A DNA stretch of 64,000 nt from Sphyrna mokarran (GCA_024679065.1 JAGIQG010000023.1:10292001-10356000), one strand, 5' to 3'; positions 6,978 through 57,676 are shown, counted from the first letter of the stretch. Notes: generated from the letters alone by a model not told the origin. A program made the numbers and translations.

Positions 6978-7014
6978 ATGTGGATTTTGATTCTCCTCAT
7001 TTGCTCTCTGCCCG
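6978..7014 (+). CDS. Gene A exon: signal peptide (MWILILLICSLP)
   Basis: ATAATG start, hydrophobic leader, G|gtgagt phase-1 donor. Paralogous exon at 39905. Confidence 0.88.
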
Positions 7015-7564
7015 GTGAGTAACAGCCAGAGCTGGATAATCAGATAATCAGTGTTAGCTTAACTCTAGTCTACAGTGTTTGTTCATTGTTTGAAGAAAGT
7101 TTCATTCTCCAGTTTCACTCATCATCAACTGTATCTAAGGAAATACATGTCAGGGAGCTAAGCAGAGATATCCTCACATTGGAACTGATTCTGCCTTCCA
7201 GTTACTCAATCACAATTTACTTTTGCCCAGAAAATTTTCTCAATAAATTGAGACCTTTTTTTGCATGAAATCTGCCTCAAAATCTGTTTGTGGATCTAAT
7301 AAATGGACCAGCGAAGGTTGTTCTATTCCACATCAGGTCTCCTCACCCTGACAGAATTGTTGCTCATCACCAATAACAAGATTGAGATTAAGCAAATTAA
7401 AGCAAATTATCAATCGAACTTAATATGTAAATGATTTTCATAAAAGCTGCTGTGGGGCTGTTTTTGCTCAACCCTTTATCTTGCTGGAAAGTTTTTTCCC
7501 TTCAAGTAGCCAGACAGATTTCAGAGTTTTAAATCACCTATTTGTTGGTAGCCATAGCACCCCA

Positions 7565-8430
7565 GCTGTTGTTCGTCCATCGTCATCAATGAGAACCTCG
7601 ACATCATTAGTCATTTTGAGTCCGAAGTTGACTGATCAGGCCAATTCGGGCACAGAATGTCCTGGCACATTTTGGACAGACTTGTGTAGACACTGTAGTT
7701 GTTGCGCTGGTGGCTCTGGACTTGTGCAGCTCGCACTTAAGTTGTGTTTTAGCAATATACCTTTCTTGGTGAGCTTGACAGCTTTGTGGATGAAGCATCG
7801 CCAGGTAGGGCGGTTTTGTGCCAGCGTTTCCCAGGTGGTCGTGTCAATGGCAAGCGACTTCAGGGAGGCCTTGAGTGTGTCTTTGAAACATTTCTTCTGC
7901 CCTCCATGCGAGCGTCTTCCAGCAAAGAGTTCCTCAAAAAGGAGCTGCTTGGGTATGCGCTTGTCTGACATACGGATGACATGATCTGCCCACCGGGTCT
8001 GTGCTCTCATCAGCAGTGTGTGGACTGATGGTAGACTTGCTCTAAAGAGAACTTCAGTGTATGTACTTTGTCTTGCCATTGAATGTATCATATTCTCCAA
8101 AGACAAGTCATGTGGAAATGATTGAGCTATCTTGCATGCCTTCAATATACAGTCCACATTTCACAGGCATACAGGAGGGTAGTGAGTACTGTGATGCTGT
8201 CGGCCTTCAGTTTTGTTGCTAGGCTGATTTCTTGATGTTTCCATACAGTGGAGTGCAGTCTACCAAAAGCAGAACTTGCCTTTGTTATTCTGCAGTTAAC
8301 TTCTGCGTCAATAGTCCCTGCTTGGGAGAGGGTGCTGCCAAGATAAGTGAAGCAGTCCACTGCCTGTAGTTTTTGCCCTTTGATTGTGATTATGTGTTCT
8401 GCATGAGGAGCAGGTGGTGCATGACATCCC
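7565..8430 (-). mobile_element. RTE-clade LINE, 3' fragment
   Basis: FTYLGSTLS, KASSAFGRL, LLYACE.WT, RWADHVIRMSDKRIPKQLLF, GGQKKCFKDTLK and a terminal CPKCARTF..RIGL motif. Confidence 0.88.
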
Positions 8431-9149
8431 TCATGCTATAGTCTCTAATACAGGCTTGTGACCAGGTCCAGGAAGAACAAGCTATTGGAAATAGACACAC
8501 ACACATTTGCTTTGTCTGCCTCCTGTATCTCCAGATTTGGAAAGTCTTCTAAGTTTAATGGAACAAAATACTTAGCAAATATAAATGAATAATATTAATG
8601 ATGTATTTGCACAACATGCATATATTCACCAAATAAAATAAACTATTATTAATTATGGATGGGAAATTAAGGATAATTTAATTTTAGAAAATCTAAGCAA
8701 GCAAACTTTAAAAATGAAAGTTGCCTTTAATAGGTAATTGTTTGAAATTGTGGGGGGAGGTTTTACATTCTCACTTGTCCTGAAAATCCTGCCCAAAGTC
8801 AATGGAGCTTCTCACTGTCTGCCTGTCGCCTGCTCTGATTCCCGTGGCAGGCGGAACGGTAAAATTCTGATTATCTGTTGTGCAATACACACTGAAAACT
8901 GCAGTAATAACAATACTGCAATCAGAACATATCTCTCATTTGCATCTGTTTCTGTTGTTTAATGTACAGTTGATGAGATATGATTTTATGAGAATTTGTC
9001 ATGACAATGTTCCTGTATAGCAGACAATTTTTCATAGTCATCTTGCTAATATTTTTCTTTTAATTCTTTAACTTTATTAAACTGGATTTCACTTTTTACT
9101 CTTGCCCATTTTAACATTATTGAATATTACATGGTAATGGAGTTTTTGA

Positions 9150-13390: not shown

Positions 13391-13968
13391 TAAACCAACA
13401 ATTTCCCTCAGTCATCAGCACCTCTTCCTCAGCTGTCATCTAAATCGATATCTAAGGCCTCCGGCCATCCTCCAAGGCCACCAATCCGTGCACCATCACC
13501 GAGGTTGGCAATCTTCACCTCCAGAAATCTCAAACTCACCCAAGATCTGAAAACCCCTCCTGCCAGAATTTAATGTGTGTGTCACATCCCATCCCTACTG
13601 CCTACACCACCTCTCAGATCAGATCAAGGATCTCTTTGTTCCTGTCATCTTCTTCAGATTGCTCACCAACTAACCGCAAATTAGGCCTGTCAGTTAGGTT
13701 TGTTTCTCAGTCTGAAATCTCTTGATGATGTCTCAAAATCACACTCTGGAGTGAATATCCACAATGTAAGGCAGAACTCCAATTTCCAGACCCCCCCCAC
13801 CCCCTCCCCGTTCACCCAGGCCCTGTCAGTGGGTCCCTAAGACTGTGATAAATGTTTATATTAATGTTTATTTTCATCACAAGCTAGGTGGAATTTGACT
13901 CATTAGAATGTCTGTGTTTGAACGAAGCAATTGTTTCCCGTTCAATTGCTGAAATGTTGTCTCCTCAG

Positions 13969-14280
13969 TTTCAGGTGCATTTCGGGCAAAAAAGGAAATA
14001 ACAGGAATTGTGGGAAGAGCGATCACAATCCATTGTCACTATGATGTGTGGTACCAGTCAAATGTAAAATATTGTTGTCGTGGCTGGAATCGCTGGTGTG
14101 ATATTGTAGCAACAACAAATGGGCAAAATGGCAGAATATCAATCACAGATTACAAGTCACAAGGAATAGTCGTTGTCACTATGAAGGATCTTCGCTCAGA
14201 AGATGCAGGATGGTACAGATGTGGTATTGTAACACGTGGTCGCAAACAAATGTGTAAAGTAAAGCTACAGATATCTAACG
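13969..14280 (+). CDS. Gene A exon: V-set Ig domain V1 (CD300/pIgR-like)
   Basis: ctcctcag acceptor, 312 nt, phase 1-1, G|gtatgt donor. VSGAFRAKKEITGIVGRAITIHCHY...KYCCRGWNRWC...DAGWYRCG...KLQISN. Confidence 0.9.
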
Positions 14281-14744
14281 GTATGTTATTCTCAGCGATG
14301 ACTTTTATTACTTGAGGAAGATCCTATGAATGAAGGTTTTGTGAATCCTCACTTCTGTGGTGAATTCCGACCTGGTTCTCCACCACGGCCTCCTGTGAAA
14401 ACTCCAGTCCATGCTCCTCAAAGGAAGTCAGGAGATGCAGCTCAGGAAGCCCATCTCCTGTCTTCTCCTGCTCGAGGCGATTATGGGCGACTTCCCCCTG
14501 CAGGGACTTAAGTTGAAATGGAAAGGCTAATGGCCAGAGGGGAGCAGGGTGTTGCAGGAGTTTGGGCAATCAGGTGGCACATGTTGGGACCATGCCTGAG
14601 AAGGCAGGAGTTGGAATGGGGGTGTTGGCGGTGCTAGAGATTTTGGCAGCAGGTGTTAGGGGTTTGATGATGGAAGGCCATGGGATGGAGTGCATCAACA
14701 TAGACCTTCCAGACAGAGGACACTGATGGCAGGGCAGGATGGAC

Positions 14745-14970
14745 ACTTACCCGTGCTGACAGAAAGCGGTCATTCATTTCTTTTCTGCACTAGGCCGTGT
14801 TCCTTCACTGCCACTGCCGCTATCTCCCAGGCTGCATTGCCCGCTCAACCCCTGGGCCGCTGACCACCTGGAGGGAAGAATCTTATCCTTCTCTCCTCGC
14901 AGCTTCCAACTGTTGCCTTAGCTCTCTCTCTCGGTGAAGTGTGGAGCTACCCCTCACGGCGCCAGTTTCC
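14745..14970 (-). mobile_element. Degenerate Myb/SANT-like ORF, probably a PIF/Harbinger transposon remnant
   Basis: Minus strand reads across frameshifts VAPHFTERE/LRQQLEA/EERRIRFFP...AAWEIAAVAV/RNTA*CRKEMND..SAR and is followed by gtaagt. Confidence 0.55.
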
Positions 14971-15342
14971 TCCTGTACCAGTCCATTGTTACAGCTTGAA
15001 TTCAGCTCCCACTTATTGACGACGCATAGCTATGATCACTCTGGGTGAGTCACCTGCCTGGAGATTCCATAATGACCTGACTCACATGGTGGCTCTTTCA
15101 TTGCACTTTATTTAATGTGAGAAGGAATCATTTCGAAGTCTATTCATTGTCTTTAACAGTTCAAAGTTGTGGGCAGTAATTGGAGATTCTCTTATAACGA
15201 GACAGAAGATTTCCATATCCGGTGAACATCATAGAGATGAGAGCGTTTTATTGACCCCATTAACCACGTCATTTTGATGTTTTATGCATCCTTTGAGATT
15301 TTATTTGATTCGAAATCTCTTTAAGAGGTTAATTAATTATGA

Positions 15343-15540
15343 TTTGATTTGATTTAGTATTGTCACATGTATTAGTATACATTGAAAAGTATTGTTTCTT
15401 GCACGCTAGACAGAAAAAGCATACTGTTCATAGAAAAGGAAAGGAGAGAATGCAGAATGTAGTGTTACTGTCCGTAATTTGGGTGTAAAGAATGATCAAC
15501 CGCATGTGAGATAGGTTCATTCAAATGTTTGATGGCGGCA
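15343..15540 (-). mobile_element. LINE 3' tail fragment (related copies 18175-18375 minus, 30930-31065 plus, 56880-57010 plus)
   Basis: Minus strand ends ...tactaatacatgtgacaatactaaatcaaatcaaa. Confidence 0.6.
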
Positions 15541-16268
15541 GGGAGTTATCCCTCAAATTGTTTTAGTTTTGTTTGTTGCCCCGAAATGCAATATCGAGAT
15601 ACAAGGTGAGATTTTCCACTCATCCCACACATTCTCTCCCCATCTTCCAGTGTCAGGGTGGGAACAATCTAGCTCAACCTCAGAGAACTGGAACCAATCA
15701 AATCTACACATTGAAAGCTCCAAAACATCGAACACAAATCTGGCAATTTGTGTTCATTTTTTGCCATAGATTATTTCAGGCTCTCACCAACTAATCCACA
15801 TTCAAAACAAAAACAATGAAATAGTAATGAAGCTCATTCTTCAGAGATGTTGCCCCTTCAGGATCAGGGTCAGGCAGCTGTGGGATTTTCAAGGATAAAG
15901 TAAACTCACCCGGGTTTGCCCCCTCGCTGTCTCCATTCTCAGATCAGCAAGTCCCACCTCAGCCAGGTGAGAGCCTCCAGCACCAGGATCCCACCCACTC
16001 TGCCTGATTGGATGATCACATCAGGCCCTGGCCTTTAATTGGCTGGAGCATTGGAGATAGCAATGGGCATTTCCAAAGAGCAATGTGCGGTGTCTGGGCC
16101 CAGACTCTCTCCTGTGTCCCATTCCCAAATCCTGATTAAACACCCACCTCATGGAGATGTCAGAATCCAACATGGTAATCTCTGGCTGAGACAGTGAAGG
16201 GGACAACAAGAAGGTATTTGATGTTTGGATGTTCATTCAGTATCTGAATGATTATTTCCTTCCTACAG

Positions 16269-16592
16269 AACCCGTCTCTGTTCCTGTGCTCCAATTTTTG
16301 ACACCACTTTATGTCTCACTTCCTGGGGGCTCAGTGTCCATCTCCTGTAAGTCTGTCCAGGGATCACTTCCCATTCAGTACACATGGTATGAAAAGACCC
16401 CGTCTGAAGATTCAAAGATCTCTGACACCAATAAACTGGATATACATTGTCAATCCTTCACACAGCAACATCATCAATATTACTGCACAGCCTCAAATAA
16501 CCAGGGAGAAAAATCGAGCGAAATGGTTGTAGTGTCAGTGATCAACAGATCAGGGGAGAATTGCAGTTATAAGATACAAGATAGCCATCATG
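16269..16592 (+). CDS. Gene A exon: C2-type Ig domain C1
   Basis: tcctacag acceptor, 324 nt, phase 1-1, G|gtaagt. EPVSVPVL...SVSISCKSVQGSLPIQYTWY...YYCTASN...ENCSY. Confidence 0.9.
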
Positions 16593-17146
16593 GTAAGTGT
16601 TATTTTATCCAAATAATACGGTTGATGTTTTTTATATTCTTGCATATTAATATATATTTGATTGGTTACATAATTGCATTAAGAGCCGATCTCTTGACTT
16701 GATGGTGATATCATTGTTGCTGCAAAGGCTGCTGTTTTAATTTCAGTTTGTACTCTGTGCAGGCAAGTCTTCTTGGAATAAACTTGTTGTGTATTACTTT
16801 GAAACTATGGGGACAAACTTACAAAAAATATTCTAAATCCAGGGCCTTTGTGAAAATGGAGGAGTTTCTGATCCATTTCTTTGGAGATTCCAAGCAACGG
16901 ATCAGAGTCCAGGGATGGGAAAGTCTCTGTCCACACACCATCACACACCCTGTCCCCCCACCCTGTCCCCCTCTCTTAATACATAAGTGCCAAAAAAAAT
17001 TTCCCCTTAGAAATTTTTGGTCAGATCACTCCCATATAATGTGATAAATTTCTATATTAAGGATTACTTTCAAGTGGAATTTAACATGTATATGTTTGAA
17101 TGAAATAGTTATTCTCTGTTCAATTCTTGAAAAGTTGTCTCCTCAG

Positions 17147-17452
17147 GTGCATTGTGGGCAGAAAGGGAAATAACAGGAATTGTGGGAAGAGCGATCACAA
17201 TCGATTGTCACTATGGGGCAGAGTACCGGTCAAATGTGAAATATTGGTGTCGCAGCTCAACTCAGAGGTGTGATGTTGTAGCAGCAACAAATCGGCAAAA
17301 TGGCAGAATATCAATCACAGATTATAAGACACAAGGAATATTTGTTGTCACAATGAAGGATCTTCGTTCAGGAGATGCAGGATGGTACAGCTGTGGAATT
17401 GAAGAACTTGGTCTCAATCCAATATATGACGTAAAACTACAAATATCTAATG
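17147..17452 (+). CDS. Gene A exon: V-set Ig domain V2
   Basis: ctcctcag acceptor, 306 nt, G|gtacat. CHYGAEYRSNVKYWCRSSTQRC...DAGWYSCGIEELGLNPIY. Confidence 0.9.
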
Positions 17453-19109
17453 GTACATTATTCTCAGTGATGACTTTTATTACTTGAGAAGGTCCTATGA
17501 ATGAAGGTTTTGTGGTTCCTCACATCTGTTGTGAACCATGACCTGGTTGTCCAATTTGGCCTCCTGTGAAAACTCCAGTCCACTCTTTTCGTTGGAAGTC
17601 AGGAGATGCAGCTCAGGAAGCCCATCTCCGGCCTTCTCCTGCTCTAGGCAATTATGGGCGACTTCCCCTCAGAGACGAAAGTGGAGATTGAAAAACTGCT
17701 GACTAGAAGGGTGCAGAGTGTCGGGGGATTGCAATCGGGGTGGCGCATGTTGGGACCGTGCCTCAGGAGGCTGGAGTTGGAATTGGGGTTTGGGGCCAGA
17801 GATTTTGGAGGCAGATGTTAGGGGTTCAGATGCTGGAAGACCATGGGTTTTTAGGGAATGCATCAACATGGGCACTCCAGGACATTCCAGAGGGTACTGA
17901 TGGCAGGACAGGATAGACACTCACTTCATTGCACTTTATTTAATGTGAGAAAGGAATTCTTTAAATGTTTATTCATTGCCTTTAACCGTACAAAGTGGTG
18001 GGCAGTAATGGAGATTCCCATACGTTTCTATAACGAGACAGAGGTCTTCCATGCCCAGTGGATATCACGGGGGTGACAGTGTTTTACTGACCATGTTAAC
18101 CACATGTCATTTTGATGTTGCATGTCCCTTTTGAGATTTTATTTGATTCAATATCTCTTTAAGAGGCTAATTAGTTTTGATTTGATTTATTACTGTCACA
18201 TGTATTACTATAGAATGAAAAGTATTGTTTCTTGAGCACTACACAGACAAAGCATGCTGTTCATAGAGAAGGAAAGGAGAAAGTGCAGAATGTAGTGTTA
18301 CAGTCATAGCTAGGATGTAGAGAAAGATCAACTGCTTATGAGGTAGGTCCATTCAAAAGTCTAATGACATCGGGGAATTATCCCTCAACTTGTTGATTTA
18401 GTTTCATTTGTTATCCCAAAATACAACACCAAGGTACAGGGTGAGATTTTCTATTCATCCCACTCATTTTCTCCCCCCCCCCTTCCGGTGTCAGGGTGGG
18501 AATGTTCCAGCTCAACCGCAGAGGACTGTAACCAATCAAATCTACATTCCCATGGAGTGCTCTAAAACATCAAACAGAAATCTGGTAATTTTGGTTCATT
18601 TTCTGCCGTGGGTTATTTCAGGCTCTTACCAACTCATTCACATTCAAGACAAGAACAATGAAACAGCATTGAAGCTCATTCTTCAGAGACACTGCCCCAT
18701 CAGGATCAGGGTCAGGCAGCTGTGGGATTTTCAAGGTTAAAGTAAACACCCGGGTTTGCCCCCTCGCTGTCTCCATTCTCAGATCCGCAACTCCCACCTC
18801 AGCCAGGTGAGAGCCTCCAGCACCAAGACCCCACCCACTCTCCCTGATTGGATGATCACATCAGGCTCTGGCCTTTAATTGGCTGGAGCATTGGAGATAA
18901 CAATGAGCATTCCTAAAGTGCAACTTGTGGTGTCTGGGCCCAGACTCTCTCCTGTGTCCCGTTCCCAAATCCTGATTAAACACCCACTTCCATGGAGATG
19001 ACAGAATCCAACATGGTGACCCCTGGCTGAGATACTGAAGGAGAAAACAAAAAGGTATTTGATGTTTGGATGTTCATTCGGTATCTGAATGATTACTTCC
19101 TTCCTACAG

Positions 19110-19433
19110 AACCCATCTCTGTTCCTGTGCTCCAATTTTTGACACCACTTTATGTCTCACTTCCTGGGGGCTCAGTGTCCATCTCCTGTAAGTCTGTCGA
19201 GGGATCACTTCCCATCCAGTACACATGGTATGAAAAGACCCCGTTTGAAGATTCAAAGATCTCTGGCACCGATAAACTGGATCTACATTGTCAATCCTTC
19301 ACACAGCGACATCATCAATATTACTGCATAGCCTCGAATTACCAGGGAGAAAAATTGAGCGAAATGGTTAACGTGTCAGTGATCAACAGATCAGGGGAGA
19401 ATTGCAGTTATGAGGTACAATATAGACACAGTG
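19110..19433 (+). CDS. Gene A exon: C2-type Ig domain C2
   Basis: 324 nt, phase 1-1, close paralog of 16269-16592, G|gtaagt. Confidence 0.9.
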
Positions 19434-20794
19434 GTAAGTGTTATTTTACCTGAACAATATGATTGATTTTTTTTATAATCTTGCCTATACATATATATTT
19501 GATTGGTTACATAATTGTATTAAGAGTTGATCACATGACTTGATGGTGTTGTCATTAGGGTGTTGCAAAGGCTGCTGTTTTAATTTAGTTTGTACTCAGT
19601 GCAGTCAAGGCCTCCTGGAATAAACTAGTTGTGTGTTACTTTGAAACTATGGGGGCAAAGTTACCAAAACATTCTAAATCCAGGGCATGTGTGAAAATGG
19701 GACAGTTTCTGATCTATTTTTTGGGAGAGTCCAAATCTGAGATCTTGTACACTGCACACAGTGAAAAAAACAGCAAAAATTGTGACTTGCTTGTAGATCG
19801 AGGGGCCAAGGCTAAAATCACCAAAAGATTGACTGAGAGCAGCAGGGGGCACCATTGTGCATGTGCACCATTGTGTAAGAGCAGTCAGTCTACTGTTCTC
19901 AGCCAGAGAACAACCCAGCCTGCATGAACCAATCAACCATGTGATCTCCTTCCCTGACTTGTCTGAATCCCTTTCCCTCTCTCCACTGATTGCAAGGCAG
20001 AGTGGCAGTAGACTTCTCCCCCTTTCCCCTCCCTAATTGTCCTGCCCCTCTCTACCTCAATGATCACTATACAAAATGAGTAGTGGTTCCCCCTCCACCC
20101 TCTCACCACCGATTGGCCATATCTAGTCTGGCCTAGCACCCATAATATGTCAGGCCCCCTCAGGTTCCACACCTTTGGAACTGCCCTGTACCCATTAGGC
20201 AGTGCCAGTGTGCAGTGCCAGGGTGCCAGGCTGGTCTCCATGGTAAAAAGGAAGTCATTTTAGCAAGTATATCTATAGTTGCTGACCATATTTAAAGTGG
20301 CCATTAAGTCTGTCAGAGGAATGTTGTTTATTTGGAACCAAAACAGTGATAAGTTACACATTAATGTTATTTCCTTTTCACTTTTAAGTATTCCTCAACT
20401 GTTGATAATTAAGTTGTGTAGGAATTCAGTAAAGAAAAAGAAAATATAGAGTAGTCTCAATTTGCTGTGTCTGCAAAAGGAATGGCAAGTCAATCAGGAT
20501 TTATGGGATCGTTCAATTCAAAACATTTATCAGTGATTTCCTACAGCATTCCCTTCCAGCCGTGTGCTGCAGTTCAGGCACACGGAGCAGGAACAAACTC
20601 CTGATTATCACAAGATGGGTTCCTATTCACTGCAGAGTACAGGCAGTGTGTGTATCTGTATTAACATGAGTGCCCCTGCTTGGAGCACCAGCTGCCTGTA
20701 TTGATCAGCCCTCAAGTACCACATGGTGCCTTTCCCGCTCCGCCCAACTCAAACTCCAGCACTCAGTTCAGTCCTTCAACACACCCCACAGGCA

Positions 20795-21865: not shown

Positions 21866-22171
21866 ATGTACTGTGGGCAGAAAGGGAAATAACGGGAATT
21901 GTGGGAAGAGCGATCACAATCCATTGTCATTATGGGGCAGAGTACCGGTCAAATGTGAAATATTGGTGTCGCGGCTGGAGTGAGCAGTGTGACGTTGTAG
22001 CAGCAACAAATCAGCAAAATGGTGGAATATCAATCACAGATAACAAGATACAAGGAGTATTCGTTGTCACTATGAAGGATCTTCGCTCAGAAGATGCAGG
22101 ATGGTACAGCTGTGGAATTGAAACATCCGACCTCGATCCATTGTATAACGTAAAACTACAAATATCTAATG
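21866..22171 (+). CDS. Gene A exon: V-set Ig domain V3
   Basis: ctcctcag acceptor, 306 nt, G|gtacat. KYWCRGWSEQC...DAGWYSCGIETSDLDPLY. Confidence 0.9.
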
Positions 22172-27732: not shown

Positions 27733-28670
27733 GTACATGTTCTCATTACAGATGCTTCCATTAACGTTGCTTTCCAATCAGAATCAATGATTATCAGTTT
27801 TGGCATGAAGATTTACAATAATTTACCTCAATGGAAATGCTAGCTGTGTTTACATGTTGCTATTGTGTTAGCTTCCTGGCAAAGTTGCTGTTTCTGTCAA
27901 TGGAAATTCAGATTAAGTGAGCTTTTTCTGTTTGCCACACCTTTGATATTGCAGCTTTCGTTCTTCATGTTAATCACTTCATCGTGAACACAATCTCATG
28001 GAGTTGTGCTTGTCACACTCCAGCGATGCCAGATTTCCTTAACCCTGTGTGTTCTGGAGTATCGCTGACAGGAACATTGCACTCACTGTCATCTTCTCCT
28101 TCTCAGTTGTCCAGTTCAATACATTGTTCCCAAACTGAGAGGGTTAAAGCCCGTTTGCTTCTGGCTGATTCCAAATTTCCTATTAGGAGGTGCACTAGGG
28201 AATTGTGAGATGACAAAAACAGAAAGTGCTTTAAAATCTCAACAGGTCTGGCAGCATCTGTGGAGAAAGAAGCAGAGTTAACATTGAGTGGAATATGATT
28301 CTATTTAGGAACAGTGTGGGATGATGTTATTGGAAGCTTTTTACTCATTGAACAGATATCTCACCATTGTTATATTGCACCAGACAATGTTGCTGTCCCA
28401 GTGACCAGTCAATTCATAACATTCTTACTTCTAAGATTTTACTCAGCATTACAGATATACTGAGGAAATTTAATGAAACCAGCTCCATTTGATCTGTATT
28501 TAATGATCATGAAGTTAATCAGTGAAACTCTAGTTGATTGCTCCAGCTAACGTGCCTTGTCTGTGTGGCGCTGCTGCAATAAGTCAGAGTGTAAAGAGGA
28601 GATTAATGTTTCAAACATGAAGCTGCTTCATTCCCTTCAAATCATTCTGTATTTCTTCCATTTTGCTCAG

Positions 28671-36575: not shown

Positions 36576-38714
36576 TTTCTACCCTGTGGATGGAGGCGCA
36601 CAGAGCCAATGACAGTGTATCAGTCTGCCTGATACTCTCGATGCTCTGAATTTTAGGCTTGACATGGAAGCATGATTAGCAGCCTGGAGGCAGGTGTGGT
36701 ATCCACTGCTCAAGCCTCTGACCCCAATTCCATTCTGGCCGGCCAGTGGGAAACATGTGGGGAATGGCTCACTATTAACTTGTATGGGTGGCAGCAGGGC
36801 ATATACCAGGTGTAATGAGGTTTCTGGGGGACGGGGGGATTTGGAAGTGGAGACCAGGAAATTGTTGAGTCCAAGGCAGATGAGGAGTCTCTGGAGTTGT
36901 CCATCAGATGGCAGTTGTTGGATTTCCAACAAGATGCACAAGAAAATGTGGAAAAGATCCCTGAACATCTGTGTCCCATTGTCCCTGCGTTGGGTGCAGC
37001 ATGTGGAGTGTGAGCGCTGCATTGACCCTGCACTCTGAACACAGCCTCTTCCATAGAGAGAATGATGGCAGTCATGGACACATACTCAAAGGTTTCTGGG
37101 ATTGTGTTCAGACGTGCAAGCCAGCAAACTGGCCGTGACCACAGCAGCTCACTGCTAATGTGAGCAATGTGTGAACAAAAGCTGTTGTTTTTAATACTTA
37201 GGTGATTTTTGTGTTGTTCTGTGAACTGGGTTATGTATCTTTATATGTGACTAATAACCTTCAACTGGGACTAGTAATCTGCAGGATTAAGGATATCAAA
37301 GAAATCTGGGTGTGCAAGATGCACTTGGAGTAAATCTGGCCAAGTTGAATTTTCAGAAAGTAACTATGACATGGATAGAAATTTGCATTAGGAGATAAAG
37401 ACGTTTCTTGTGTTCAGCTGCTAAATTTAAAAGGGAAGTAAAAGGTTTTACAATTTGGAAAATGTTCTTAATAAATAACGCAAAGTTAATCCATTTTGTT
37501 TCACCCAAAAGTGGTATCATATGTTCTGAGAAATAGAAAATTTTAAGAAGTATAAGGAGAAAGGTAAAAAGATAAAAGAGAAAACAAGGGGACAATTCTC
37601 CCATCTCTCTGCACTACTCTATTCTGCCCAGTGGGTAGGCCATTTCGGGGGCTTCTTGCTGGACACTACGGCCTCCGGGAGTCTCCGTGTGTCAGGTTTC
37701 CAGCGCCGTCAGCTCTGCGTGATCTCTGGTGCAGAGCTGCATAACTTATTCAACTTGTCATTCAAATCCTATTTAAGTATTATTAGCAGGATCAGGACTG
37801 CGATCTCCGGGGCCTGTTAACCCCTTCCCCACACACCAGCAGTGTTTCATTCCAACCGAGTTTATTATAGTCCAACCCTCCCCCCACACTTGTGGGGATC
37901 TGGTCGCCCAACCCTTCTGGAACGAAGAGGGGTGGGGGTGTGGAGACAATTGAGACCACCCCCTCCCCCCCCCAAGAATGTGGCACTGTAATCTCCCACT
38001 CAGTCGAGGCCTGCACCAACTACACAGGCCAGGCTGCCAAGTTAATCAAGGTCTACAGGGCATCAGAGTCAGCCAGTTGCCTCCAACCAAACTGCCAGCA
38101 ATGGGGAACTACTGAGACATCAGGCTCACAAATACAAATGTAAGTCACTATGATGGCCCTCACCATTCCAGGGTATGCCCTGTCCCACCAGTGGGCAGAG
38201 CCAACAGAGGCAGCAGTGGCACAGTGATACATTTTCAGGAGCGAGTTACCCTGGGTGACCTCACCATTGGCTCTCTGCCCCTTTAATTGTGACGATACTT
38301 TTCCACATTCTGCGTCTACCAGCCGAACAAATTATTGTGAGATGATGCAATGATGTCATCCTCCAAACGTAATCGCCTGCAATTCCCAGGATGATCAGGT
38401 ATGCCACATGCCCACTTTCAGAGAGTAAAATTCAGTTCAAATGTTCAAACAATATGTCACTCACCAGGATCATTCATCACTATCTATGTCTTGGCAAATA
38501 CACGTCCCCATGTCACAGGGTGGTGAGTAGTTATATCCTCAATTTGGAATTGAATCCTGTTCCCAGTTACTCAATCACAATTTCCTTTGACTCAGAGCCT
38601 TCTCTCTGTGAATTGAGATCCTTTTCTGACTGAATTCTGCCCCAGAACGTGTGTGTGGATAAACGGAGTTGGGGGTGTTTTTCTGCTGCACATCAAGGAG
38701 CTCTGATCTCCTCC

Positions 38715-39795: not shown

Positions 39796-39904
39796 TTCTT
39801 CTTCATTTAATTTTCTGATACAATTTATTTTTGACATTTATTTCAGTGTGAGACAAGGAGCTGGGGGACCGACGACAAGCACTGACCTGATCTCCAACAC
39901 AACA

Positions 39905-39941
39905 ATGTGGATTTTGATTCTCCTTCTTTCCTCTCTGCCTG
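39905..39941 (+). CDS. Gene B exon: signal peptide (MWILILLLSSLP)
   Basis: ACAATG start, G|gtgagt phase-1 donor, paralog of 6978-7014. Confidence 0.88.
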
Positions 39942-44689: not shown

Positions 44690-45004
44690 TTTCAGGTGCA
44701 TTGTGGGCAGAAAAGAGATTCAAAGGAGTTGTGGGAAGAGAGATTTCAATAAATTGTCACTATGGTGCAGGGTACGAGTCACATGTTAAATATTGGTGTC
44801 ACGGCTGGACTCGCCATTGTACAGTTGTAGCAACAACAAACTGGCAAAATGAAAAAATATCAATCAGAGATAACAATTCACAAAGAATATTTGTTGTCAC
44901 TGTGAAGAATCTTCGCTCAGGAGATGCAGGATGGTACTGCTGTGGGATTGAAAAAGCTGGGGATCTCGATCCACTGTATGCTGTCGAGCTTCAAATATCT
45001 TACG
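44690..45004 (+). CDS. Gene B exon: V-set Ig domain (CD300/pIgR-like)
   Basis: tttcctcag acceptor, 315 nt, phase 1-1, G|gtacat. VSGALWAEKRFKGVVGREISINCHY...KYWCHGWTRHC...DAGWYCCGIEKAGDLDPLY. Confidence 0.9.
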
Positions 45005-52078: not shown

Positions 52079-52199
52079 AATCTAAATATTTATGTGAAGT
52101 TTCTACAACAGAATCATCAACTACGACACATTGCACAAGTACAAACATTATTTCCACCAGCAGCAGCAACAAATCTTCAGAATCGAAAAATGATGAAAG
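52079..52199 (+). CDS. Gene B exon: Ser/Thr-rich stalk (ESKYLCEVSTTESSTTTHCTSTNIISTSSSNKSSESKNDE)
   Basis: tttcaacag acceptor, 121 nt, phase 1-2, AG|gtacac. Confidence 0.82.
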
Positions 52200-52872: not shown

Positions 52873-52960
52873 AATCACCAACTACGATGCATTCCACAAG
52901 TACAAATATTATTTCCACTGGCAGCCACAGCATATCTTCAGAATCGGAAAATAATGAAAG
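52873..52960 (+). other. Duplicated partial stalk exon of gene B (alternative exon or pseudo-exon)
   Basis: Paralog of 52112-52199 including the downstream intron. tttctgcaacag acceptor, 88 nt, phase 1-2, AG|gtacaa. ESPTTMHSTSTNIISTGSHSISSESENNE. Confidence 0.55.
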
Positions 52961-54759
52961 GTACAATGTTCTTATTGGGGATGTAATGATTGGCACACAT
53001 TTCTGTGCAACAAGTGAAATGTTCTTTGAACATTTGGAGACAATGTGGCTGATCAGAATGGAAATGGTGTTCCCCCGCTCCCCCTCCCACCACCACCCTC
53101 ACCACTCCAACCCATTGATGGGCATGTTGAGCTGCTAAAATTACCAGAGAGCGGAGAAAGCATTTGAGTCCAATTTCTCACCTCTCATAATCTTACCAGT
53201 ATCAGATATCCGGCACGTTCAGCCTCCAGCCCATTTCTGGCGAAAGGCTGAATACATTTGTTAAGTCGACGATAAGCCTAATTTAGATGAAATTAACCAC
53301 CCCGGGACGTAATCGTTCTTACCTTTGTGACTTGGCTGGGAGATTCTCTGATCAAGAAAACACCTGGACCTCATAAACAAGGACCAATGGTGATGGCCTC
53401 AGCGGTAGGACTGGAGGCCGTTGATGTCCCTAGGAGGTCGAGGGCAAGTGGAGGAGATGCTCCTTGTGCAATGCCAACGATATGACTGGTGTACGGAGAC
53501 CAAAATGCATACAATCGTTGGGATGGGAGGAGGGCCCGCTGGCAACCTGCCCATAAGCAATGCTGAGGTAAATGGGACCTGCTTTCAATTGCACGTGAGC
53601 AGTAGTGGTAGAGGGGAGGGGTGATTAGTCAGGGTGTTGTGAGAAGCTGGACAGAGGTGATATTTTCAGGGGAGCTGATGGCGATCAGCCATGGGCCTGT
53701 GGATAGATTGGTGGTGCGGGTGTTTTCCTGAAGTCAGCTGCATTCGCAATGTGCCAACAGAATTCTATCTGAAACCTGTCAACTCTCTGCTGGATGCCAT
53801 TGCGCATGTGCAGCCACATAGATCTCCACATGCACAATGGCTCCCTCTGCTGCTGCAGCAGCCTTTCTGGCAGGTTAAGCTTAGCCTTTCACTCTAGTTG
53901 CTGGAAGCAGACTAGTCTATTTTTTTTTGTTGCTCTGAGTGCAAATGATATGAAACAAACTCACCCACAAAATGAATCTGAAATACTCCTGTCTTCATGC
54001 TAACAGTCCAAAGATATGTGTATTACATTGTTTGACTATGCTAAATTGGCCCTAGTGTCAGGGGGATTAGTAATATGTGGGATTACAGGAATAGGGCCTG
54101 GGTGAGATTGTGGTCGGTGCAAACTCGTTGGGCCGCATGGCCTCCTTCTGCACTATCTGGATTTTATGATTCCATGATTCTCGCTGGACACAGAATTTTT
54201 CTCAGAAAATCACCTATTTGTTTCTGTTAGAGGAAATTCAGACTAATAAGGAAGCTTTTTCTGTTTCAACACCTTAGATGGTGCAGTTTTCATTATTCAC
54301 GTTCATCACTTTACCATCAACCCAATCTCAGCAGGTCCTTCAGCATCTGTAGAGAGAGGAGCAGAGTTAACATTGAGTGGAATATGATTTTATTTAGGAA
54401 CAGTGTGGGATGGTGTTATTAGAAGTTTTTTACTCATTGAACAGATATTTCACCATTGTTATATTGCATCAGACAATGTTGCTGTCCCAGTGACCAGTCA
54501 ATTCATAACATTCTTACTTCTAAGATTTTACTCAGCATTACCGATATACTGAGGAAATGTAATGAAACCAGCTCCATTTGATCCGTATCTAATGATTATG
54601 AAGTTAATCAGTGAAACTCTAGTTGATTGCTCCAGCTCACGTGCCTTGTCTGTGCAGCACTGCTACAATAGGTCAGAGTGTAAAGAGGAGATTAATGTTT
54701 CAAACATGAAGCTGCCTCATTCCCTTCAAATCATTCTGTATTTCTTCCAGTTTGCTCAG

Positions 54760-54850
54760 TTTCATTATCTGGAATGTGATTCGCTGGGGGCTCTTTACCC
54801 TCCTGGTGATTTGTGTTATTTCGGTCACATGGTACACGAGAAAATCTCAG
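54760..54850 (+). CDS. Gene B exon: transmembrane segment with Arg, identical to gene A
   Basis: Same 91 nt as 28671-28761. An extra in-frame acceptor (ttcttccag) 9 nt upstream would start the exon at 54751. Confidence 0.88.
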
Positions 54851-56316
54851 GTGAGGATTACGGAATTTACAACAATCATTCTGTAAGTTTCATGATAGAA
54901 ACATGAAAAGGCAGGGAACAGAGAGATAGGACCATGTAGAGGCAAGAAAATATTAGATTAGAGAGACATCTGTATCAGCACAGACTTGGTGGGCGTGTTC
55001 CTATATTGTTCTTTGTTCTGCCGTATTGCTCAGAACGAGTGCCACGGTGTCACACACTGGTAGGACAGGCTGTGATTGAGCCCACCCTGACAGCAACTTA
55101 CTTTCCAAAAGATTGAAATGCTATTTTTAAAGTCTGGCCAGATTTATGAATGTTAAGATGGTACTGCAATCCCCACATATACCATCCTCCCACTTCAAAC
55201 ACCATGTAATATCTCCACCCTCCAACCCTCCCCCAACTCCCAACACTGCTTCCGGCATTGCTTGACAACTTCCTTGGTATTTCCCCCAGCCAAGTGGCAT
55301 GAATGTTATTTCCCCAACCACCCTCCACTAGGCACTGATTGTCTCAGAGCATTTTAGTAAATCATTAGTTCCAAAATGTAAGAAAGATGTAGCCTTGATA
55401 TTGTTTAGATTTTGCTGCAATCGGACATTGAGACTTCGGTATGTGAAGAGTCACAAATCATATTAAACACTGTGCAGTCAACAGCAAACATCCCCATTTT
55501 TGACCTCATGTTGGAAAGAAAGGCATTGCTAAAGATGGTTGGGCTGAGAATCTTTTGTACCTCATGTAGTGATGTCCTGGAACTGAGATGGCTGACCTCC
55601 AACCATAACAATTACCTTCCTTTATACCAGGTATCACTCCAACCAATGGAGGGCTTTCTACCCGAGTCCCATTCATTCCTGTTTTGTTCAGGTTCTTTGA
55701 TGCCACACTCAGTCAATTGCTGCCTTGATATCAAGGGCAGTCACTCTCACCTCACTCTGGCATTCAGCTCTTTTGTCCATGTTTTAACACAGGCTATAAT
55801 AGGGTCAGGAGTTGAGTGACCCTGGCTGACCCCAAACTGAGCATCCACGAGCAGCTTATTGATGAGTAAATGCCTCTTGATGGTGCTGTTGATGACCTCT
55901 TCCATCACTTTACTGATTATTGAGATTTAACTGATGGGGCAGTAATTGGCCAGGTTGGATTTGTCCTTTTTATGGAAACATAACTGAGCAATTTTCCACA
56001 TTGCTGGGAGATGCCAATATTGTAGCTGTACTGGACCAGCTTGCCGAGAGGTGCAGCAGGATCTGGAGCAGAAGCCTTCACTATTATTGCCAGAGAATTA
56101 ATCACAGCCAGAAGGAAATATTAGTTACCCATGAGAAAGTAATGTTACATGTCTTTATGTGGGATACAAATAACAATTCTTCCCAGCAATGGGTGATCAA
56201 TGTGATCTCGAAACTGCCCCAAATTGTTGCTATTTCCAGAATTCTGTTCAAGACTGAAATGTCAATTGATACATCGTTCTCCCAGTCTCAATGAATCCAA
56301 TGATTTTCTTTTCCAG

Positions 56317-56364
56317 TCACTCAATGAATCCGATGCTCACAGTTGGACCAAAGTGGGAAAATGA
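56317..56364 (+). CDS. Gene B putative terminal coding exon: short tail SLNESDAHSWTKVGK*
   Basis: gattttcttttccag acceptor in phase 0, stop at 56362-56364, AATAAA at 56462-56467. Confidence 0.62.
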   Translation, partial: SLNESDAHSWTKVGK

Positions 56365-57676
56365 AGACTCCAGGATTCTATCTGCATCGACAGAATTTTG
56401 CATCCTGGTCAAACATCCATTCCTCATCCAGCTTTGAACATTTCTCTTGACAAATCTACAGAATAAAATGTTTTTTGTCATTTAATGATTTTAACCAAAA
56501 CATTAGTGCTGGGTCCTTCAAGTTGCATATCTACATCTGAACAACAACTGATCTGTTTGCTGACTTAAGGTTGAGAATTCTCATTTCATATTCTTACCTT
56601 AATCTCTGTTAATTTAAAGAGTAGCACATTCTGTAAGAAATAGACAATATGATTTTTGCAGTCACTGGAAACAATTCGCTCCAATGCTATGTTCCACGTT
56701 GAATGTGCCTGTATAACAATAGGATGGGAGACACACTCGTTCAATGAGAAGTTGTTTTCTCGAGATGGCATCAGAATGAGGTGACGTCTTGCAAGCTGTG
56801 CCCAGTATATCTTCTAATTCTATCTTTTACTCTTGTTCCACACTTTAAAACTTTGTTCTAACTCTTTTAAACTACGACTGTATTGCTACATTCTGCACTT
56901 GCTCCATTCCTTCTCTGTGAACAGTATGCTTTGTCTGTATAAAACACAAGAAACTAAACTTTTCACTGTATAGCAATATCTGTGACAACAATAAAACAAA
57001 TCAAATCAAGCATGTATTTCCTTTTACTTCAGAAAGCTGAATTTCTCTTAATTTCATGCTGTTATGATTTCACCTTTATTTTAGCAAACACAATCTACAC
57101 TGTGAAAATTTCCCTGTTTCCCAATGTTTACAAGTTCAGTTTCAAGCCTGAAGCCTAATTCCCCATCTGAATTCCACCTCACTTGTTCCCCCTCCGCACT
57201 GGGTCTGTGTGTGTGTGTGTGTGTGTGTGGGAAATCTGCTCGACATCAGCCAGTCCTGGATGGTCGAAAATTACAACTGCACATTGTGAACAGTGAAGCC
57301 ATTGTCTTTATCCCCACAAGAAACATCTTTGACTCCATCTACCTCCCTGTCCAATTGTGTCCTCGTCCACACTGTAGGTACCTCCTCACTCAGCTATTCC
57401 AATGTCTGGGCATCTCCCATCCAGCATTAAATTCACCCCATCAAAATCCCTCTGCCAGTTTTACTGGGATAAAGGCTGTATATAAATGCAAGTTTTGCTC
57501 CTTGAACTCCACTCCACCCAGAAGGAAATAAAACAAATTCAGGATAAACCTGCCCTCAACTGGCAGGAACTGTTTTTCAAGTAGTTGCTGCTTGATTTTA
57601 CTGGAGGTTGCCAATTAGCTGGTAATTCTACTGAAAACATCAGAAATCAAATTAGAGACTCCCAGTCGCTGAGCTA

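What the first reader, a model, noticed from the sequence alone, without database searches (positions are those of the whole stretch)
6978..56467. Tandem cluster of modular (V-C2)n activating immune receptors in a cartilaginous fish
Seen: two complete genes with open, phase-consistent exon chains, L-(V-C2)x3-stalk-TM (703 aa) and L-(V-C2)x1-stalk-TM-tail (311 aa). Known: a V domain with an extra C-C' disulfide (KYWC..C) is typical of CD300, pIgR and TREM. CD300 has a single V and pIgR has V domains only, so strictly alternating V-C2 repeats are not the mammalian architecture. Skate MDIRs are the closest described family I know of. Inference: a germline-encoded receptor family that varies its ectodomain length by duplicating a two-exon V-C2 cassette.
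Basis: partly seen in the sequence, partly recalled or inferred. Interest (0 to 1): 0.85.

Follow-up and report, generated by a model that had tools for sequence, protein, structure and literature searches.

The report
Shark MDIR-type V-C2 immune receptor genes
Two neighbouring shark genes encode cell-surface immune receptors built from repeated pairs of antibody-like domains; they are real, but they belong to a receptor family first described in a skate in 2006, so they are new members of a known kind.

Summary
On the + strand lie two genes made of open, GT-AG-flanked, phase-compatible exons. Gene 1 is leader-(V-C2)x3-stalk-TM (701 or 703 aa). Gene 2 is leader-V-C2-stalk-TM-tail (309-314 aa). 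The V exons are pIgR/CD300-type V-set domains with the extra Cys pair, and the C2 exons resemble FCRL5 domains.

The reading is right, but it is not new. The exons are 49-70% identical to skate MDIR2, MDIR3 and MDIR5. By my domain HMMs MDIR5 is V-C2-V-C2 and carries the same W-x-V-x-R-W transmembrane motif. RefSeq models with (V-C2)x3, an Arg-bearing TM and a short tail exist in five other elasmobranch species (six models). They are named 'pIgR-like'. A Mustelus asterias model (stalk and TM 96% identical) looks like the orthologue of gene 1.

Among 120 fetched relatives with a C2 domain, 45 carry the Arg-TM motif and 43 of these lack ITIM-like motifs. Another 50 lack the motif and carry ITIM-like tails. 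This is a paired activating/inhibitory family.

'Activating' remains inference. No RNA run was listed, so splicing of all three cassettes is untested. Gene 1 shows possible decay: its core Trp in V1 is a Cys, and TGA is the first codon of its last exon.

The scan noted the same family elsewhere in this genome, about 122 kb upstream and 260 kb downstream.

The parts
6657..6977 (+). Conserved upstream region of gene 1 (putative promoter and 5' UTR)
   Evidence: 82.5% identical to 39592-39904 upstream of gene 2. Promoter function was not tested.
6978..7014 (+). Gene 1 leader exon (12 codons plus 1 base, donor GTGAGT)
   Evidence: The leader peptide is identical to that of the Mustelus model P0171.
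13975..14280 (+). Gene 1 V1 exon (306 nt, phase 1-1). An alternative in-frame acceptor lies at 13969. The core Trp is replaced by Cys.
   Evidence: V-set 34.6 bits; pairs with Mustelus domain 1, SH-aLRT 97; Cys at the Trp position in 1 of 69 V domains
16269..16592 (+). Gene 1 C2 exon 1 (324 nt, phase 1-1)
17147..17452 (+). Gene 1 V2 exon (306 nt, phase 1-1)
   Evidence: V-set 40.3 bits; pIgR 3.6e-50, CLM-1 6e-16
19110..19433 (+). Gene 1 C2 exon 2 (324 nt, phase 1-1)
   Evidence: FCRL5 1.1e-34; sister of C2 exon 1
21866..22171 (+). Gene 1 V3 exon (306 nt, phase 1-1)
   Evidence: V-set 42.3 bits
26045..26368 (+). Gene 1 C2 exon 3, membrane-proximal (324 nt, phase 1-1)
   Evidence: 90% identical to the last C2 domain of Mustelus P0171
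27648..27732 (+). Gene 1 Ser/Thr-rich stalk exon (85 nt, phase 1 to 2)
   Evidence: 96% identical to the P0171 stalk
28671..28761 (+). Gene 1 transmembrane exon carrying the W-x-V-x-R-W motif (91 nt, phase 2 to 0)
   Evidence: (96% to P0171; 53% to skate MDIR5, E 1.4e-7)
30372..30374 (+). TGA as the first codon of gene 1's last exon (gene 2 has TCA here). AATAAA lies at 30517-30522.
39905..39941 (+). Gene 2 leader exon
44696..45004 (+). Gene 2 V exon (309 nt, phase 1-1). An alternative acceptor lies at 44690.
   Evidence: V-set 30.0 bits
49509..49832 (+). Gene 2 C2 exon (324 nt, phase 1-1)
52079..52199 (+). Gene 2 stalk exon a (121 nt, phase 1 to 2)
52873..52960 (+). Gene 2 candidate alternative stalk exon b (88 nt, phase 1 to 2). 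It is out of frame if spliced after exon a, so the two would be mutually exclusive.
   Evidence: Its use was not tested.
54751..54850 (+). Gene 2 transmembrane exon (100 nt; 91 nt from the alternative acceptor at 54760)
   Evidence: 91% identical to P0171
56317..56364 (+). Gene 2 tail exon coding part (15 aa, no Tyr, then TGA). AATAAA lies at 56462-56467.
   Evidence: 79% to the P0171 tail; 50% to the Heptranchias P0157 tail
13886..19734 (+). Intragenic tandem duplicate of the V-C2 cassette, introns included (13886-16893 against 17007-19734, 81-86% identical)
28235..38033 (+). First copy of a recent segmental duplication. It is 93.5-98.6% identical to 54324-63990, with an offset of about 26 kb. 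It holds the TM and tail exons of both genes and their downstream DNA. The second copy runs to the end of the window.

Best explanation
The window holds two tandem members of the chondrichthyan MDIR (modular domain immune-type receptor) family. These are type I membrane proteins. Their ectodomains are chains of a pIgR/CD300-type V domain followed by an FCRL-type C2 domain, with one exon per domain and every exon in phase 1-1. Gene 1 has three V-C2 cassettes and gene 2 has one. Both end in a Ser/Thr-rich stalk, a highly conserved TM helix with an Arg near its outer end (W-x-V-x-R-W-x-x-F-x-L-L), and a tyrosine-free tail of 5 or 20 residues.

Shown here: the exon structure, the domain types, membership of the clade that holds skate MDIR2, MDIR3 and MDIR5, growth by tandem duplication of a roughly 3-kb cassette, a recent 26-kb duplication that gives both genes nearly identical 3' ends, and a family-wide split between Arg-TM/short-tail forms and ITIM-tail forms.

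Inferred: the Arg pairs in the membrane with an acidic residue of an ITAM-bearing adaptor of the FcR-gamma, DAP12 or CD3-zeta kind. On that reading these are the activating partners of the ITIM-bearing relatives, they sit on leukocytes, and all three cassettes of gene 1 are spliced into one mRNA. The ligand is unknown. By analogy with the V-domain relatives it could be a membrane lipid (as for CD300) or polymeric Ig (as for pIgR and the Fc alpha/mu receptor).

My confidence by part: family membership about 0.9; a full three-cassette transcript from gene 1 about 0.6; adaptor-coupled activation about 0.5.
For: Exons and phases.

Domain types:
- Pfam V-set passes its cut-off in 4 of 4 V exons.
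- Against the PDB, V2 hits pIgR at 3.6e-50 over 5 domains and CLM-1/CD300f at 6e-16, with both extra Cys aligned.
- The C2 exon hits FCRL5 at 1.1e-34, and the next hit is 7.2e-4. A profile of the four C2 exons hits FCRL5 at 1.3e-47.

Family membership:
- Searches with the related models P0010 and P0171 returned proteins named 'Modular domain immune-type receptor 2/3/5' of Rostroraja eglanteria.
- Window V exons are 49-57% and C2 exons 55-70% identical to them. The TM exon is 53-55% identical to the MDIR5 TM, E about 1e-7.
- In the V tree, 40 of 40 V domains of V-C2 proteins, window included, form one clade (SH-aLRT 97), apart from 29 V domains of V-only pIgR-like proteins.

Same architecture elsewhere:
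- VCVC occurs in 30 and VCVCVC in 11 of the 250 fetched proteins.
- Six VCVCVC models have an Arg-TM and a short tail without ITIM-like motifs (P0152, P0153, P0154, P0157, P0159, P0167).
- Orthologue: Mustelus P0171, with stalk and TM 96% identical, V1 paired with its domain 1 (SH-aLRT 97) and C1+C2 grouped with its domain 2 (SH-aLRT 99).

Family-wide split: of 120 proteins with a C2 domain, 45 carry the Arg-TM motif and 43 of these 45 have no ITIM-like motif. Another 50 lack the motif and have ITIM-like motifs. 25 are unclear. In the TM helix, W0, R4, W5 and L11 are invariant, and F8, L10 and I13 are nearly so, in 46 sequences.
Against: - There is no transcript evidence for this locus.
- The closest annotated model (Mustelus P0171) is V-C2-V-V-C2, not V-C2 x3. 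Inclusion of the middle C2 exon is therefore not supported by that model.
- Pairwise dN/dS between the window's own exons is high: 0.44-1.04 for V and 0.66-1.51 for C2. This fits either fast immune-gene evolution or relaxed constraint.
- V1 of gene 1 has Cys where 59 of 69 V domains have the core Trp and the other nine have L, I or F. Gene 1's tail is cut off by a TGA.
- The Arg lies at the outer edge of the hydrophobic stretch, so it could be a flanking rather than a buried residue. As I recall the abstract of the MDIR paper (not held here), MDIR5 was listed among forms without typical signalling motifs.
- Akula et al. 2014 (PMC4016189, passages read) reported finding no FcR-gamma homologue in shark data. 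If that is true, one candidate adaptor is missing.
Confidence: 0.7

Rival explanations
1. Gene 1 is a decaying copy, or it does not make the full three-cassette protein. Because every Ig exon is symmetrical (phase 1-1), transcripts may skip V1, the middle C2 or other exons, or the gene may be silent.
For: - The core Trp of V1 is a Cys, in 1 of 69 V domains compared.
- TGA is the first codon of the last exon, where gene 2 has TCA and the Mustelus model reads Ser.
- dN/dS reaches 1.04 for V1 against gene 2's V, and 1.51 for C1 against C2.
- The Mustelus orthologue model lacks a C2 between its second and third V domains.
- The upstream TM acceptor AG present in gene 2 reads AT in gene 1.
Against: - All 10 exons are open and have intact GT-AG sites.
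- The TGA leaves the TM and a 5-residue tail intact. A Chiloscyllium model (P0167), also V-C2 x3, likewise ends 5 residues after its TM.
- V1 keeps all four Cys of the fold and groups with the first domain of the orthologue.
Confidence: 0.2
2. The Arg-TM forms are not adaptor-coupled activators. They would be non-signalling decoy, adhesion or shed receptors, with the Arg simply flanking the helix.
For: - The Arg sits 4 residues into the conserved motif, at the extracellular end.
- The tails have no Tyr.
- As recalled from the MDIR abstract (paper not held), MDIR5 was grouped with forms lacking signalling motifs.
- Akula 2014 reported no shark FcR-gamma (passages).
Against: - The TM helix is conserved far more tightly than simple anchoring needs. 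W0, R4, W5 and L11 are invariant, and F8, L10 and I13 nearly so, in 46 sequences that include sharks (one of them a hexanchiform) and batoids.
- The motif and ITIM tails are almost mutually exclusive: 43 of 45 Arg-TM proteins have no ITIM-like motif.
- From general knowledge, FcR-gamma-coupled receptors such as Fc-alpha-RI, NKp46 and GPVI carry an Arg in the outer third of the TM (recalled, not tested).
Confidence: 0.2
3. The genes are the shark orthologues of pIgR, or of FCRL5, as the RefSeq names of their relatives suggest.
For: - RefSeq names relatives 'polymeric immunoglobulin receptor-like' or 'Fc receptor-like protein 5'.
- The best solved-structure matches are pIgR for the V exon and FCRL5 for the C2 exon.
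Against: - V and C2 domains alternate in one chain, which neither pIgR (V only) nor FCRL (C2 only) shows.
- The tail is 5 or 20 residues long.
- The window's V exons sit in a clade apart from V-only pIgR-like proteins of bony fishes, a caecilian and rays.
- The same family also receives the names CMRF35-like, CXADR-like and A33-like, so these names reflect automatic best hits.
Confidence: 0.05

Closest known systems
Skate MDIRs (modular domain immune-type receptors, Rostroraja/Raja eglanteria; Cannon et al. 2006, Immunogenetics 58:362)
   Same: - The two domain kinds are the same and are interleaved. By my HMMs MDIR5 is V-C2-V-C2, MDIR2 is V-C2 and MDIR3 is V-V-C2-V-C2.
- Identity to the window is 49-57% for V and 55-70% for C2.
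- MDIR5 has the same W-x-V-x-R-W TM and a short tail.
- All fall in one V-domain clade.
- The family has both Arg-TM and ITIM forms.
   Different: - The species and lineage differ: a shark close to Mustelus rather than a skate.
- Gene 1 has three V-C2 cassettes, which none of the three MDIR entries I retrieved has.
- Gene 1 lacks the short conserved tail.
- I could not read the primary paper, and I did not retrieve MDIR1 or MDIR4.
RefSeq models 'polymeric immunoglobulin receptor-like' of elasmobranchs, for example Mustelus asterias XP model P0171 (611 aa) and Chiloscyllium punctatum P0167 (717 aa)
   Same: - P0171 has an identical leader, a stalk and TM 96% identical, V domains 77-87% and C2 domains 85-91% identical. 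It is the likely orthologue of gene 1.
- P0167, P0152, P0153, P0154, P0157 and P0159 have the same architecture as gene 1: leader, V-C2 x3, stalk, Arg-TM and a short tail.
   Different: - P0171 is V-C2-V-V-C2. The window's C1 and C2 are sisters, and both correspond to its single domain 2.
- These are automatic models with no functional study that I could find.
Mammalian CD300/CMRF35 family and pIgR
   Same: The V domain has the second Cys pair (KYWC..C); both Cys align with pIgR domains. CD300 also has paired activating and inhibitory members with charged TM residues (general knowledge).
   Different: CD300 has one V domain and no C2. pIgR has V domains only and a long sorting tail. The window's V exons fall outside the V-only clades.
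FCRL family (FCRL5)
   Same: The C2 exons match the repeated domains of FCRL5 (chain residues 268-824), with per-domain E values down to 7e-5 and 1.3e-47 for the profile as a whole.
   Different: FCRLs have no V domain and signal through ITAM- or ITIM-like tails, which these genes lack.

Membership tests
MDIR (chondrichthyan modular domain immune-type receptors) | Membrane-distal Ig domain of the pIgR/CD300/TREM kind | tested here: met
   V-set passes the Pfam cut-off in 4 of 4 V exons. PDB hits: pIgR 3.6e-50, CLM-1 6e-16, TREM2 about 7e-6. The four fold Cys are conserved in 61-69 of 69 V domains compared.
MDIR (chondrichthyan modular domain immune-type receptors) | A second, C2/I-type domain subfamily related to FcR homologues, combined modularly in variable number | tested here: met
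   FCRL5 is the only strong PDB match for the C2 exons. The window has 3 cassettes in gene 1 and 1 in gene 2. Family architectures run from VC to VCVCVC and beyond.
MDIR (chondrichthyan modular domain immune-type receptors) | Sequence grouping with the named skate MDIR proteins | tested here: met
   Entries named MDIR2, MDIR3 and MDIR5 were retrieved. Identity is 49-70% per domain. One V clade holds all of them (SH-aLRT 97, quick tree, 69 rows). In the C2 tree shark and batoid domains interleave by lineage.
MDIR (chondrichthyan modular domain immune-type receptors) | Forms with a positively charged TM residue alongside ITIM-bearing forms | tested here: met
   Both window genes have the Arg-TM and tails without Tyr. 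Family split: 45 Arg-TM, 50 ITIM-type and 25 unclear, of 120.
MDIR (chondrichthyan modular domain immune-type receptors) | Expressed as spliced mRNA | not testable with these tools
pIgR | Ectodomain of V-type domains only, and a long cytoplasmic tail with sorting signals | tested here: not met
   C2 exons alternate with V exons. The tail is 5 or 20 aa. The V exons lie outside the V-only clades.
CD300/CMRF35 | A single V domain on a stalk | tested here: not met
   There are 2 or 6 Ig domains per gene, including C2 domains.
FCRL | C2-type domains only, with ITAM- or ITIM-like tails | tested here: not met
   V exons are present, and neither tail has a Tyr.
Adaptor-coupled activating receptor (a functional class, not a sequence family) | A basic TM residue that pairs with the Asp of an ITAM adaptor | tested here: inconclusive
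   An Arg is present and invariant in 46 of 46 TM segments, but it lies near the helix end.

The most novel reading that the evidence does not exclude
The MDIR-type chain joins a pIgR/CD300/Fc-alpha-mu-receptor-type V domain and an FCRL-type C2 domain in a single receptor. It could therefore be the missing immunoglobulin (Fc or polymeric Ig) receptor system of cartilaginous fishes. It could also be close to the ancestral arrangement from which the V-only (pIgR/CD300) and C2-only (FCRL/FcR) families of bony vertebrates split. In the data examined the combination is confined to Chondrichthyes: 22 of the 150 best V-domain relatives carry the C2 domain, and all 22 are chondrichthyan. A 2014 survey reported no pIgR, FcRL or FcR-gamma homologues in sharks (PMC4016189, passages).
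Probability: 0.1. Interest if true: 0.75.

Novelty: new member of a known kind. Interest (0 to 1): 0.3.

Why it matters
The locus adds a well-resolved genomic example to a family known mostly from a few skate cDNAs and from automatic models with misleading names (pIgR-like, FCRL5, CMRF35-like).

It shows at DNA level how the family changes domain number. There is a tandem copy of about 3 kb carrying a V-C2 cassette with its introns. Single exons have been gained or lost relative to a closely related shark. A 26-kb duplication gives neighbouring genes the same TM and tail module.

The strongly conserved Arg-bearing TM helix, set against ITIM-tailed relatives, points to a paired activating/inhibitory system throughout the elasmobranchs sampled. 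Its ligands and adaptor are unknown. That question is worth testing, because both domain types are related to mammalian Ig-binding receptors. As a discovery, though, the architecture itself is not new.

Tried and rejected
A single exon would probably have been a better query. Read laying therefore could not be used.

As an indirect route to spliced fragments, I searched the V2 exon alone with the search for homologous proteins. It found no candidate in the 0.55-1.75x length range. This says nothing about longer proteins.

To see whether Mustelus has an unannotated C2 exon, I called look-up of encoding contigs on P0171.

I used profile and sequence searches against PDB sequences instead.

Literature. 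The MDIR paper (PMC3701310, pmid 16738934) and the Cannon 2010 review (PMC2823954) are not held. What I say of the MDIR paper's content is recalled from its abstract. [quoted passage not shown] Searches found no held paper describing this family in sharks; one search was mostly noise. I did not ask for supplements; any supplement of the MDIR paper might list further forms.

Rejected readings. A pIgR or FCRL orthologue is rejected on architecture, tail and tree. Extra family exons on the minus strand or elsewhere in the window are ruled out. NCBIfam gave nothing, as expected for a prokaryotic library.

No protein flagged as encoded by the window appeared. The window's own products therefore seem not to be in that collection within the length ranges searched.

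Limits of the trees and counts. Trees 43 and 44 are 'quick' trees (SH-aLRT only). They were built on domains cut from 22 proteins that I chose out of the 250 fetched, plus the 8 window exons. The other 228 proteins were left out. In the V tree 31 of 65 inner branches are unresolved and the outgroups have long branches. The architecture and TM counts use HMMs built from the window's own 4+4 exons and simple regular expressions. Several models counted are gene fusions or fragments.

This call adds that field and a sentence of part-by-part confidences, and is otherwise the same report.

Full report
WHAT IS THERE

The window has no N and is 42.7% G+C. A tblastn of one V and one C2 exon against all six frames finds exactly four V exons (E <= 5e-42) and four C2 exons (E <= 6e-45). 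All are on the + strand, and nothing else scores below E 0.2.

Reading the flanks shows that every one of these eight exons is 306, 309 or 324 nt long. Each enters and leaves in phase 1. Each has a pyrimidine-rich AG acceptor and a GT donor (GTAAGT, GTACAT or GTATGT).

Two 37-nt leader exons (ATG at 6978 and at 39905, donor GTGAGT) lie in a conserved block. The block 6657-7079 is 82.5% identical to 39592-40005.

Downstream of each last C2 exon lie three further exons:
- a Ser/Thr-rich stalk exon (phase 1 to 2);
- a transmembrane exon (phase 2 to 0);
- a last exon followed by AATAAA.

I did not build a joined sequence. Adding the exon lengths gives 2106 nt (701 aa) for gene 1 and 939 nt (312 aa) for gene 2.

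DOMAIN TYPES

All four V exons pass Pfam's V-set cut-off, at 30.0-42.3 bits against a cut-off of 26. The C2 exons hit only the short Ig models:
- Ig_3 scores 26.7-29.6 bits, below its cut-off of 30, in all four.
- Ig_C17orf99 is above its cut-off in two of four.
- The 'ig' model is above its cut-off in one of four.

Against PDB sequences, V2 matches all five domains of pIgR (3.6e-50) and single-domain CD300/CLM proteins (6e-16). TREM2, NKp44 and the Fc-mu receptor score more weakly. Both cysteines of the KYWC..C pair align with those of pIgR.

The C2 exon matches the repeated domains of FCRL5 (1.1e-34; the next hit is 7.2e-4). A profile of the four C2 exons gives FCRL5 1.3e-47, titin 5.8e-9 and FCRL4 0.003, with 11 sequences at E <= 0.01.

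WHAT IT BELONGS TO

A HMMER search of V2 against 1.84 billion representative proteins gave 2562 hits at E <= 0.001. The best were multi-V proteins of 263-1254 aa. Look-ups showed these to be RefSeq models of sharks, skates and rays, named 'polymeric immunoglobulin receptor-like', 'CMRF35-like molecule' or 'uncharacterized'.

Searching with one of them (P0010) returned 133 proteins at E <= 1e-10, of which 120 were listed. Three are named Modular domain immune-type receptor 2, 3 and 5 of Rostroraja eglanteria, the clearnose skate (sequences).

I built HMMs from the window's own four V and four C2 exons and scored all 250 proteins fetched by then. The domain strings are:
- MDIR2: V-C.
- MDIR5: V-C-V-C.
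- MDIR3: V-V-C-V-C.
- Across the whole set: VC 39, VCVC 30, VCVCVC 11, VVCVC 6, and others. The V-only strings belong to pIgR-like proteins.

Window V exons are 49-57% and C2 exons 55-70% identical to the MDIR domains. The TM exon is 53-55% identical to the TM of MDIR5, with E about 1e-7.

In a quick maximum-likelihood tree of 69 V domains, all 40 from V-C2 proteins form one clade (SH-aLRT 97). These 40 include the window, sharks, batoids, Callorhinchus and MDIR2, MDIR3 and MDIR5. They sit apart from 29 V domains of V-only pIgR-like proteins of a bichir, a snakehead, a mormyrid, a caecilian and two rays (names).

The window's genes are therefore members of the MDIR family.

[quoted passage not shown] The primary paper (Cannon et al. 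2006) is not held. My memory of its abstract is that it reports one to six Ig domains of four subfamilies, a charged TM in MDIR1 and ITIMs in MDIR2 and MDIR3. That is recall, not a result.

THE SAME ARCHITECTURE ELSEWHERE

Of the 11 VCVCVC proteins:
- Six have the Arg-bearing TM and a short tail without ITIM-like motifs: Hemitrygon P0152, Hypanus P0153, Pristis P0154, Heptranchias P0157 and P0159, and Chiloscyllium P0167.
- Three have ITIM-like tails.
- Two have no TM.

Gene 1's exact layout is thus already present in public annotation for five other elasmobranch species.

The closest relative is Mustelus asterias P0171, 611 aa and named 'pIgR-like'. Its leader is identical, its stalk and TM are 96% identical, its V domains 77-87%, its C2 domains 85-91% and its tail 79% identical to gene 2's tail. 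V1 pairs with its first domain (SH-aLRT 97). The window's C1 and C2 are sisters inside a clade with its single second domain (SH-aLRT 99). I take it as the orthologue of gene 1. It comes from a related but different species, because no protein flagged as the window's own appeared.

Its domain string is V-C-V-V-C. Either this lineage gained a C2 exon between V2 and V3, or Mustelus lost it, or the Mustelus model skips it.

HOW THE FAMILY CHANGES

Self-comparison of the window shows three layers.

1. Inside gene 1, 13886-16893 and 17007-19734 are tandem copies at 81-86% identity. The similarity runs through the introns, so a cassette of about 3 kb (V exon, intron, C2 exon) was duplicated as DNA.

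2. V3, C3 and the gene 2 exons match the others only in and close to the exons (78-89%). This is older divergence.

3. 28235-38033 matches 54324-63990 at 93.5-98.6% with an offset of about 26 kb. This recent duplication begins in the intron before the TM exon and runs to the end of the window. Both genes therefore carry almost the same TM exon, tail exon and 3' flank, while their stalks and Ig exons differ. A first-stage note places another V-type motif 6.9 kb past the window's end (s1-886931). That is where a third gene would lie if the 26-kb unit repeats. I could not check it.

In the C2 tree, domains of one protein often group together: Heptranchias d2/d4/d6, Callorhinchus d2/d4, Hypanus d2/d4. 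Cassette duplication or homogenisation thus recurs in separate lineages. In batoids the membrane-proximal C2 domains form their own group.

I add that single exons also come and go (MDIR3, P0171).

HOW IT LIKELY WORKS

The TM exon encodes a hydrophobic helix that begins W-N-V-I-R-W and is followed by a basic stop-transfer stretch.

Gene 2's tail is 20 residues long counting from that stretch, and it has no Tyr. In gene 1 the first codon of the last exon is TGA where gene 2 has TCA, which leaves a 5-residue tail.

Among the first 250 fetched proteins, 120 have a C2-type domain:
- 45 of these carry W-x-[VMIL]-x-R-W after the last Ig domain. Of the 45, 43 have no ITIM-like motif, and the commonest length after the motif window is 18 residues.
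- 50 lack the motif and have at least one ITIM-like motif.
- 25 are truncated, secreted or unclear.

In the 45 TM segments plus the window's, W0, R4, W5 and L11 are invariant, and F8, L10 and I13 are nearly so.

A helix kept this tightly across sharks and batoids, and almost never combined with ITIM tails, is best explained by a conserved partner in the membrane. I therefore favour an ITAM-adaptor-coupled activating receptor paired with inhibitory relatives. That is inference.

Points against this reading:
- The Arg is near the outer end of the helix.
- I recall that MDIR5 was not counted as 'activating' in the original abstract.
- Akula et al. 2014 (PMC4016189, passages) reported no FcR-gamma, pIgR or FcRL homologues in the shark data then available.

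That last statement is at odds with the domain matches found here and with the MDIR entries. It does leave the adaptor unidentified. The ligand is unknown.

IS GENE 1 HEALTHY?

Points for:
- All exons are open.
- All splice sites are intact.
- V1 groups with the first domain of the orthologue.

Points against:
- V1 has Cys at the core Trp position. 59 of 69 V domains have Trp there, nine have L, I or F, and only V1 has Cys.
- The tail is truncated.
- The upstream TM acceptor used by gene 2 and implied by the Mustelus model is lost.
- Pairwise dN/dS among the window's exons is 0.44-1.04 for V and 0.66-1.51 for C2. These values come from few substitutions and were not tested for significance.

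They fit either a fast-evolving immune gene or relaxed constraint. Without RNA this stays open. No RNA run was listed, so no reads could be laid.

DISTRIBUTION

Of the 150 best V-domain representatives, 22 also carry the C2-type domain. All 22 are chondrichthyan. The V-only hits that I named come from bony fishes, a turtle, a caecilian and chondrichthyans. Only the top 150 of 2562 hits were examined, so absence of the combination elsewhere is not shown.

together name more than 20 chondrichthyan species with relatives, including the holocephalan Callorhinchus. For Callorhinchus only ITIM-type forms were among the rows I analysed.

VERDICT

The finding is real and correctly read, but it is a new member of a known kind. 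The V-C2 modular architecture, its variable length and its charged-TM and ITIM forms are those of MDIRs. Three-cassette Arg-TM models are already annotated in other elasmobranchs. What the locus adds is a clear genomic picture of cassette duplication, exon gain or loss between close relatives, and 3'-module sharing through a 26-kb duplication.

The scan's first stage noted the same family on other DNA of this genome: s1-886383 about 122 kb upstream and s1-886589 about 260 kb downstream. The cluster is therefore much larger than this window. I did not check those notes.

Supplementary files were not requested.

Noticed in passing
window 474-4344 (+): A largely intact non-LTR retrotransposon. 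ORF1 has a GDSL-esterase/OSK-like domain, followed by an AP-endonuclease domain and a reverse transcriptase split over overlapping frames. It lies upstream of gene 1.
   Followed up: partly
window 31720-31828 and 57676-57784 (+): Full-length matches to 5S rRNA (49.5 bits against a gathering score of 38), one in each copy of the 26-kb duplication. Whether they are a 5S gene, a pseudogene or the head of a 5S-derived SINE was not resolved.
   Followed up: no
window 14074-14076 (V1 exon of gene 1): The core Trp of the V fold (K-Y-W-C) is a Cys in V1 only: 1 of 69 V domains compared. V1 also has an extra Cys near its end.
   Followed up: partly
window 30372 against 56317: A single-base difference (TGA against TCA) at the first codon of the last exon removes the 15-residue tail from gene 1. 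The tail motif (L-N-E-S-D) recurs in the Mustelus and Heptranchias models.
   Followed up: yes
window 52079-52199 and 52873-52960: Two stalk exon candidates in gene 2 have the same entry and exit phases, and the second is a partial copy of the first. They can only be used one at a time.
   Followed up: partly
related proteins: RefSeq gives this one family many unrelated names: pIgR-like, Fc receptor-like 2/5/6, CMRF35-like, CXADR-like, A33 antigen-like, and Fc alpha/mu receptor-like. One model is fused to a TRIM69-like gene (P0126). Several models join neighbouring genes (P0013, P0005, P0002).
   Followed up: no
related proteins P0009 (Narcine, five V domains) and P0014 (Hemitrygon, three V domains): Rays also have V-only 'pIgR-like' models. 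These fall outside the MDIR V clade and group weakly near the V-only proteins of bony vertebrates. This bears on the published statement that cartilaginous fishes lack pIgR homologues.
   Followed up: no
window about 13045-13356, 40838-41104, 45762-46191, 46817-47176, 52480-52729: Repeated short ORF fragments with similar peptide runs occur on both strands inside introns. They look like copies of one SINE-like repeat. I did not analyse them.
   Followed up: no
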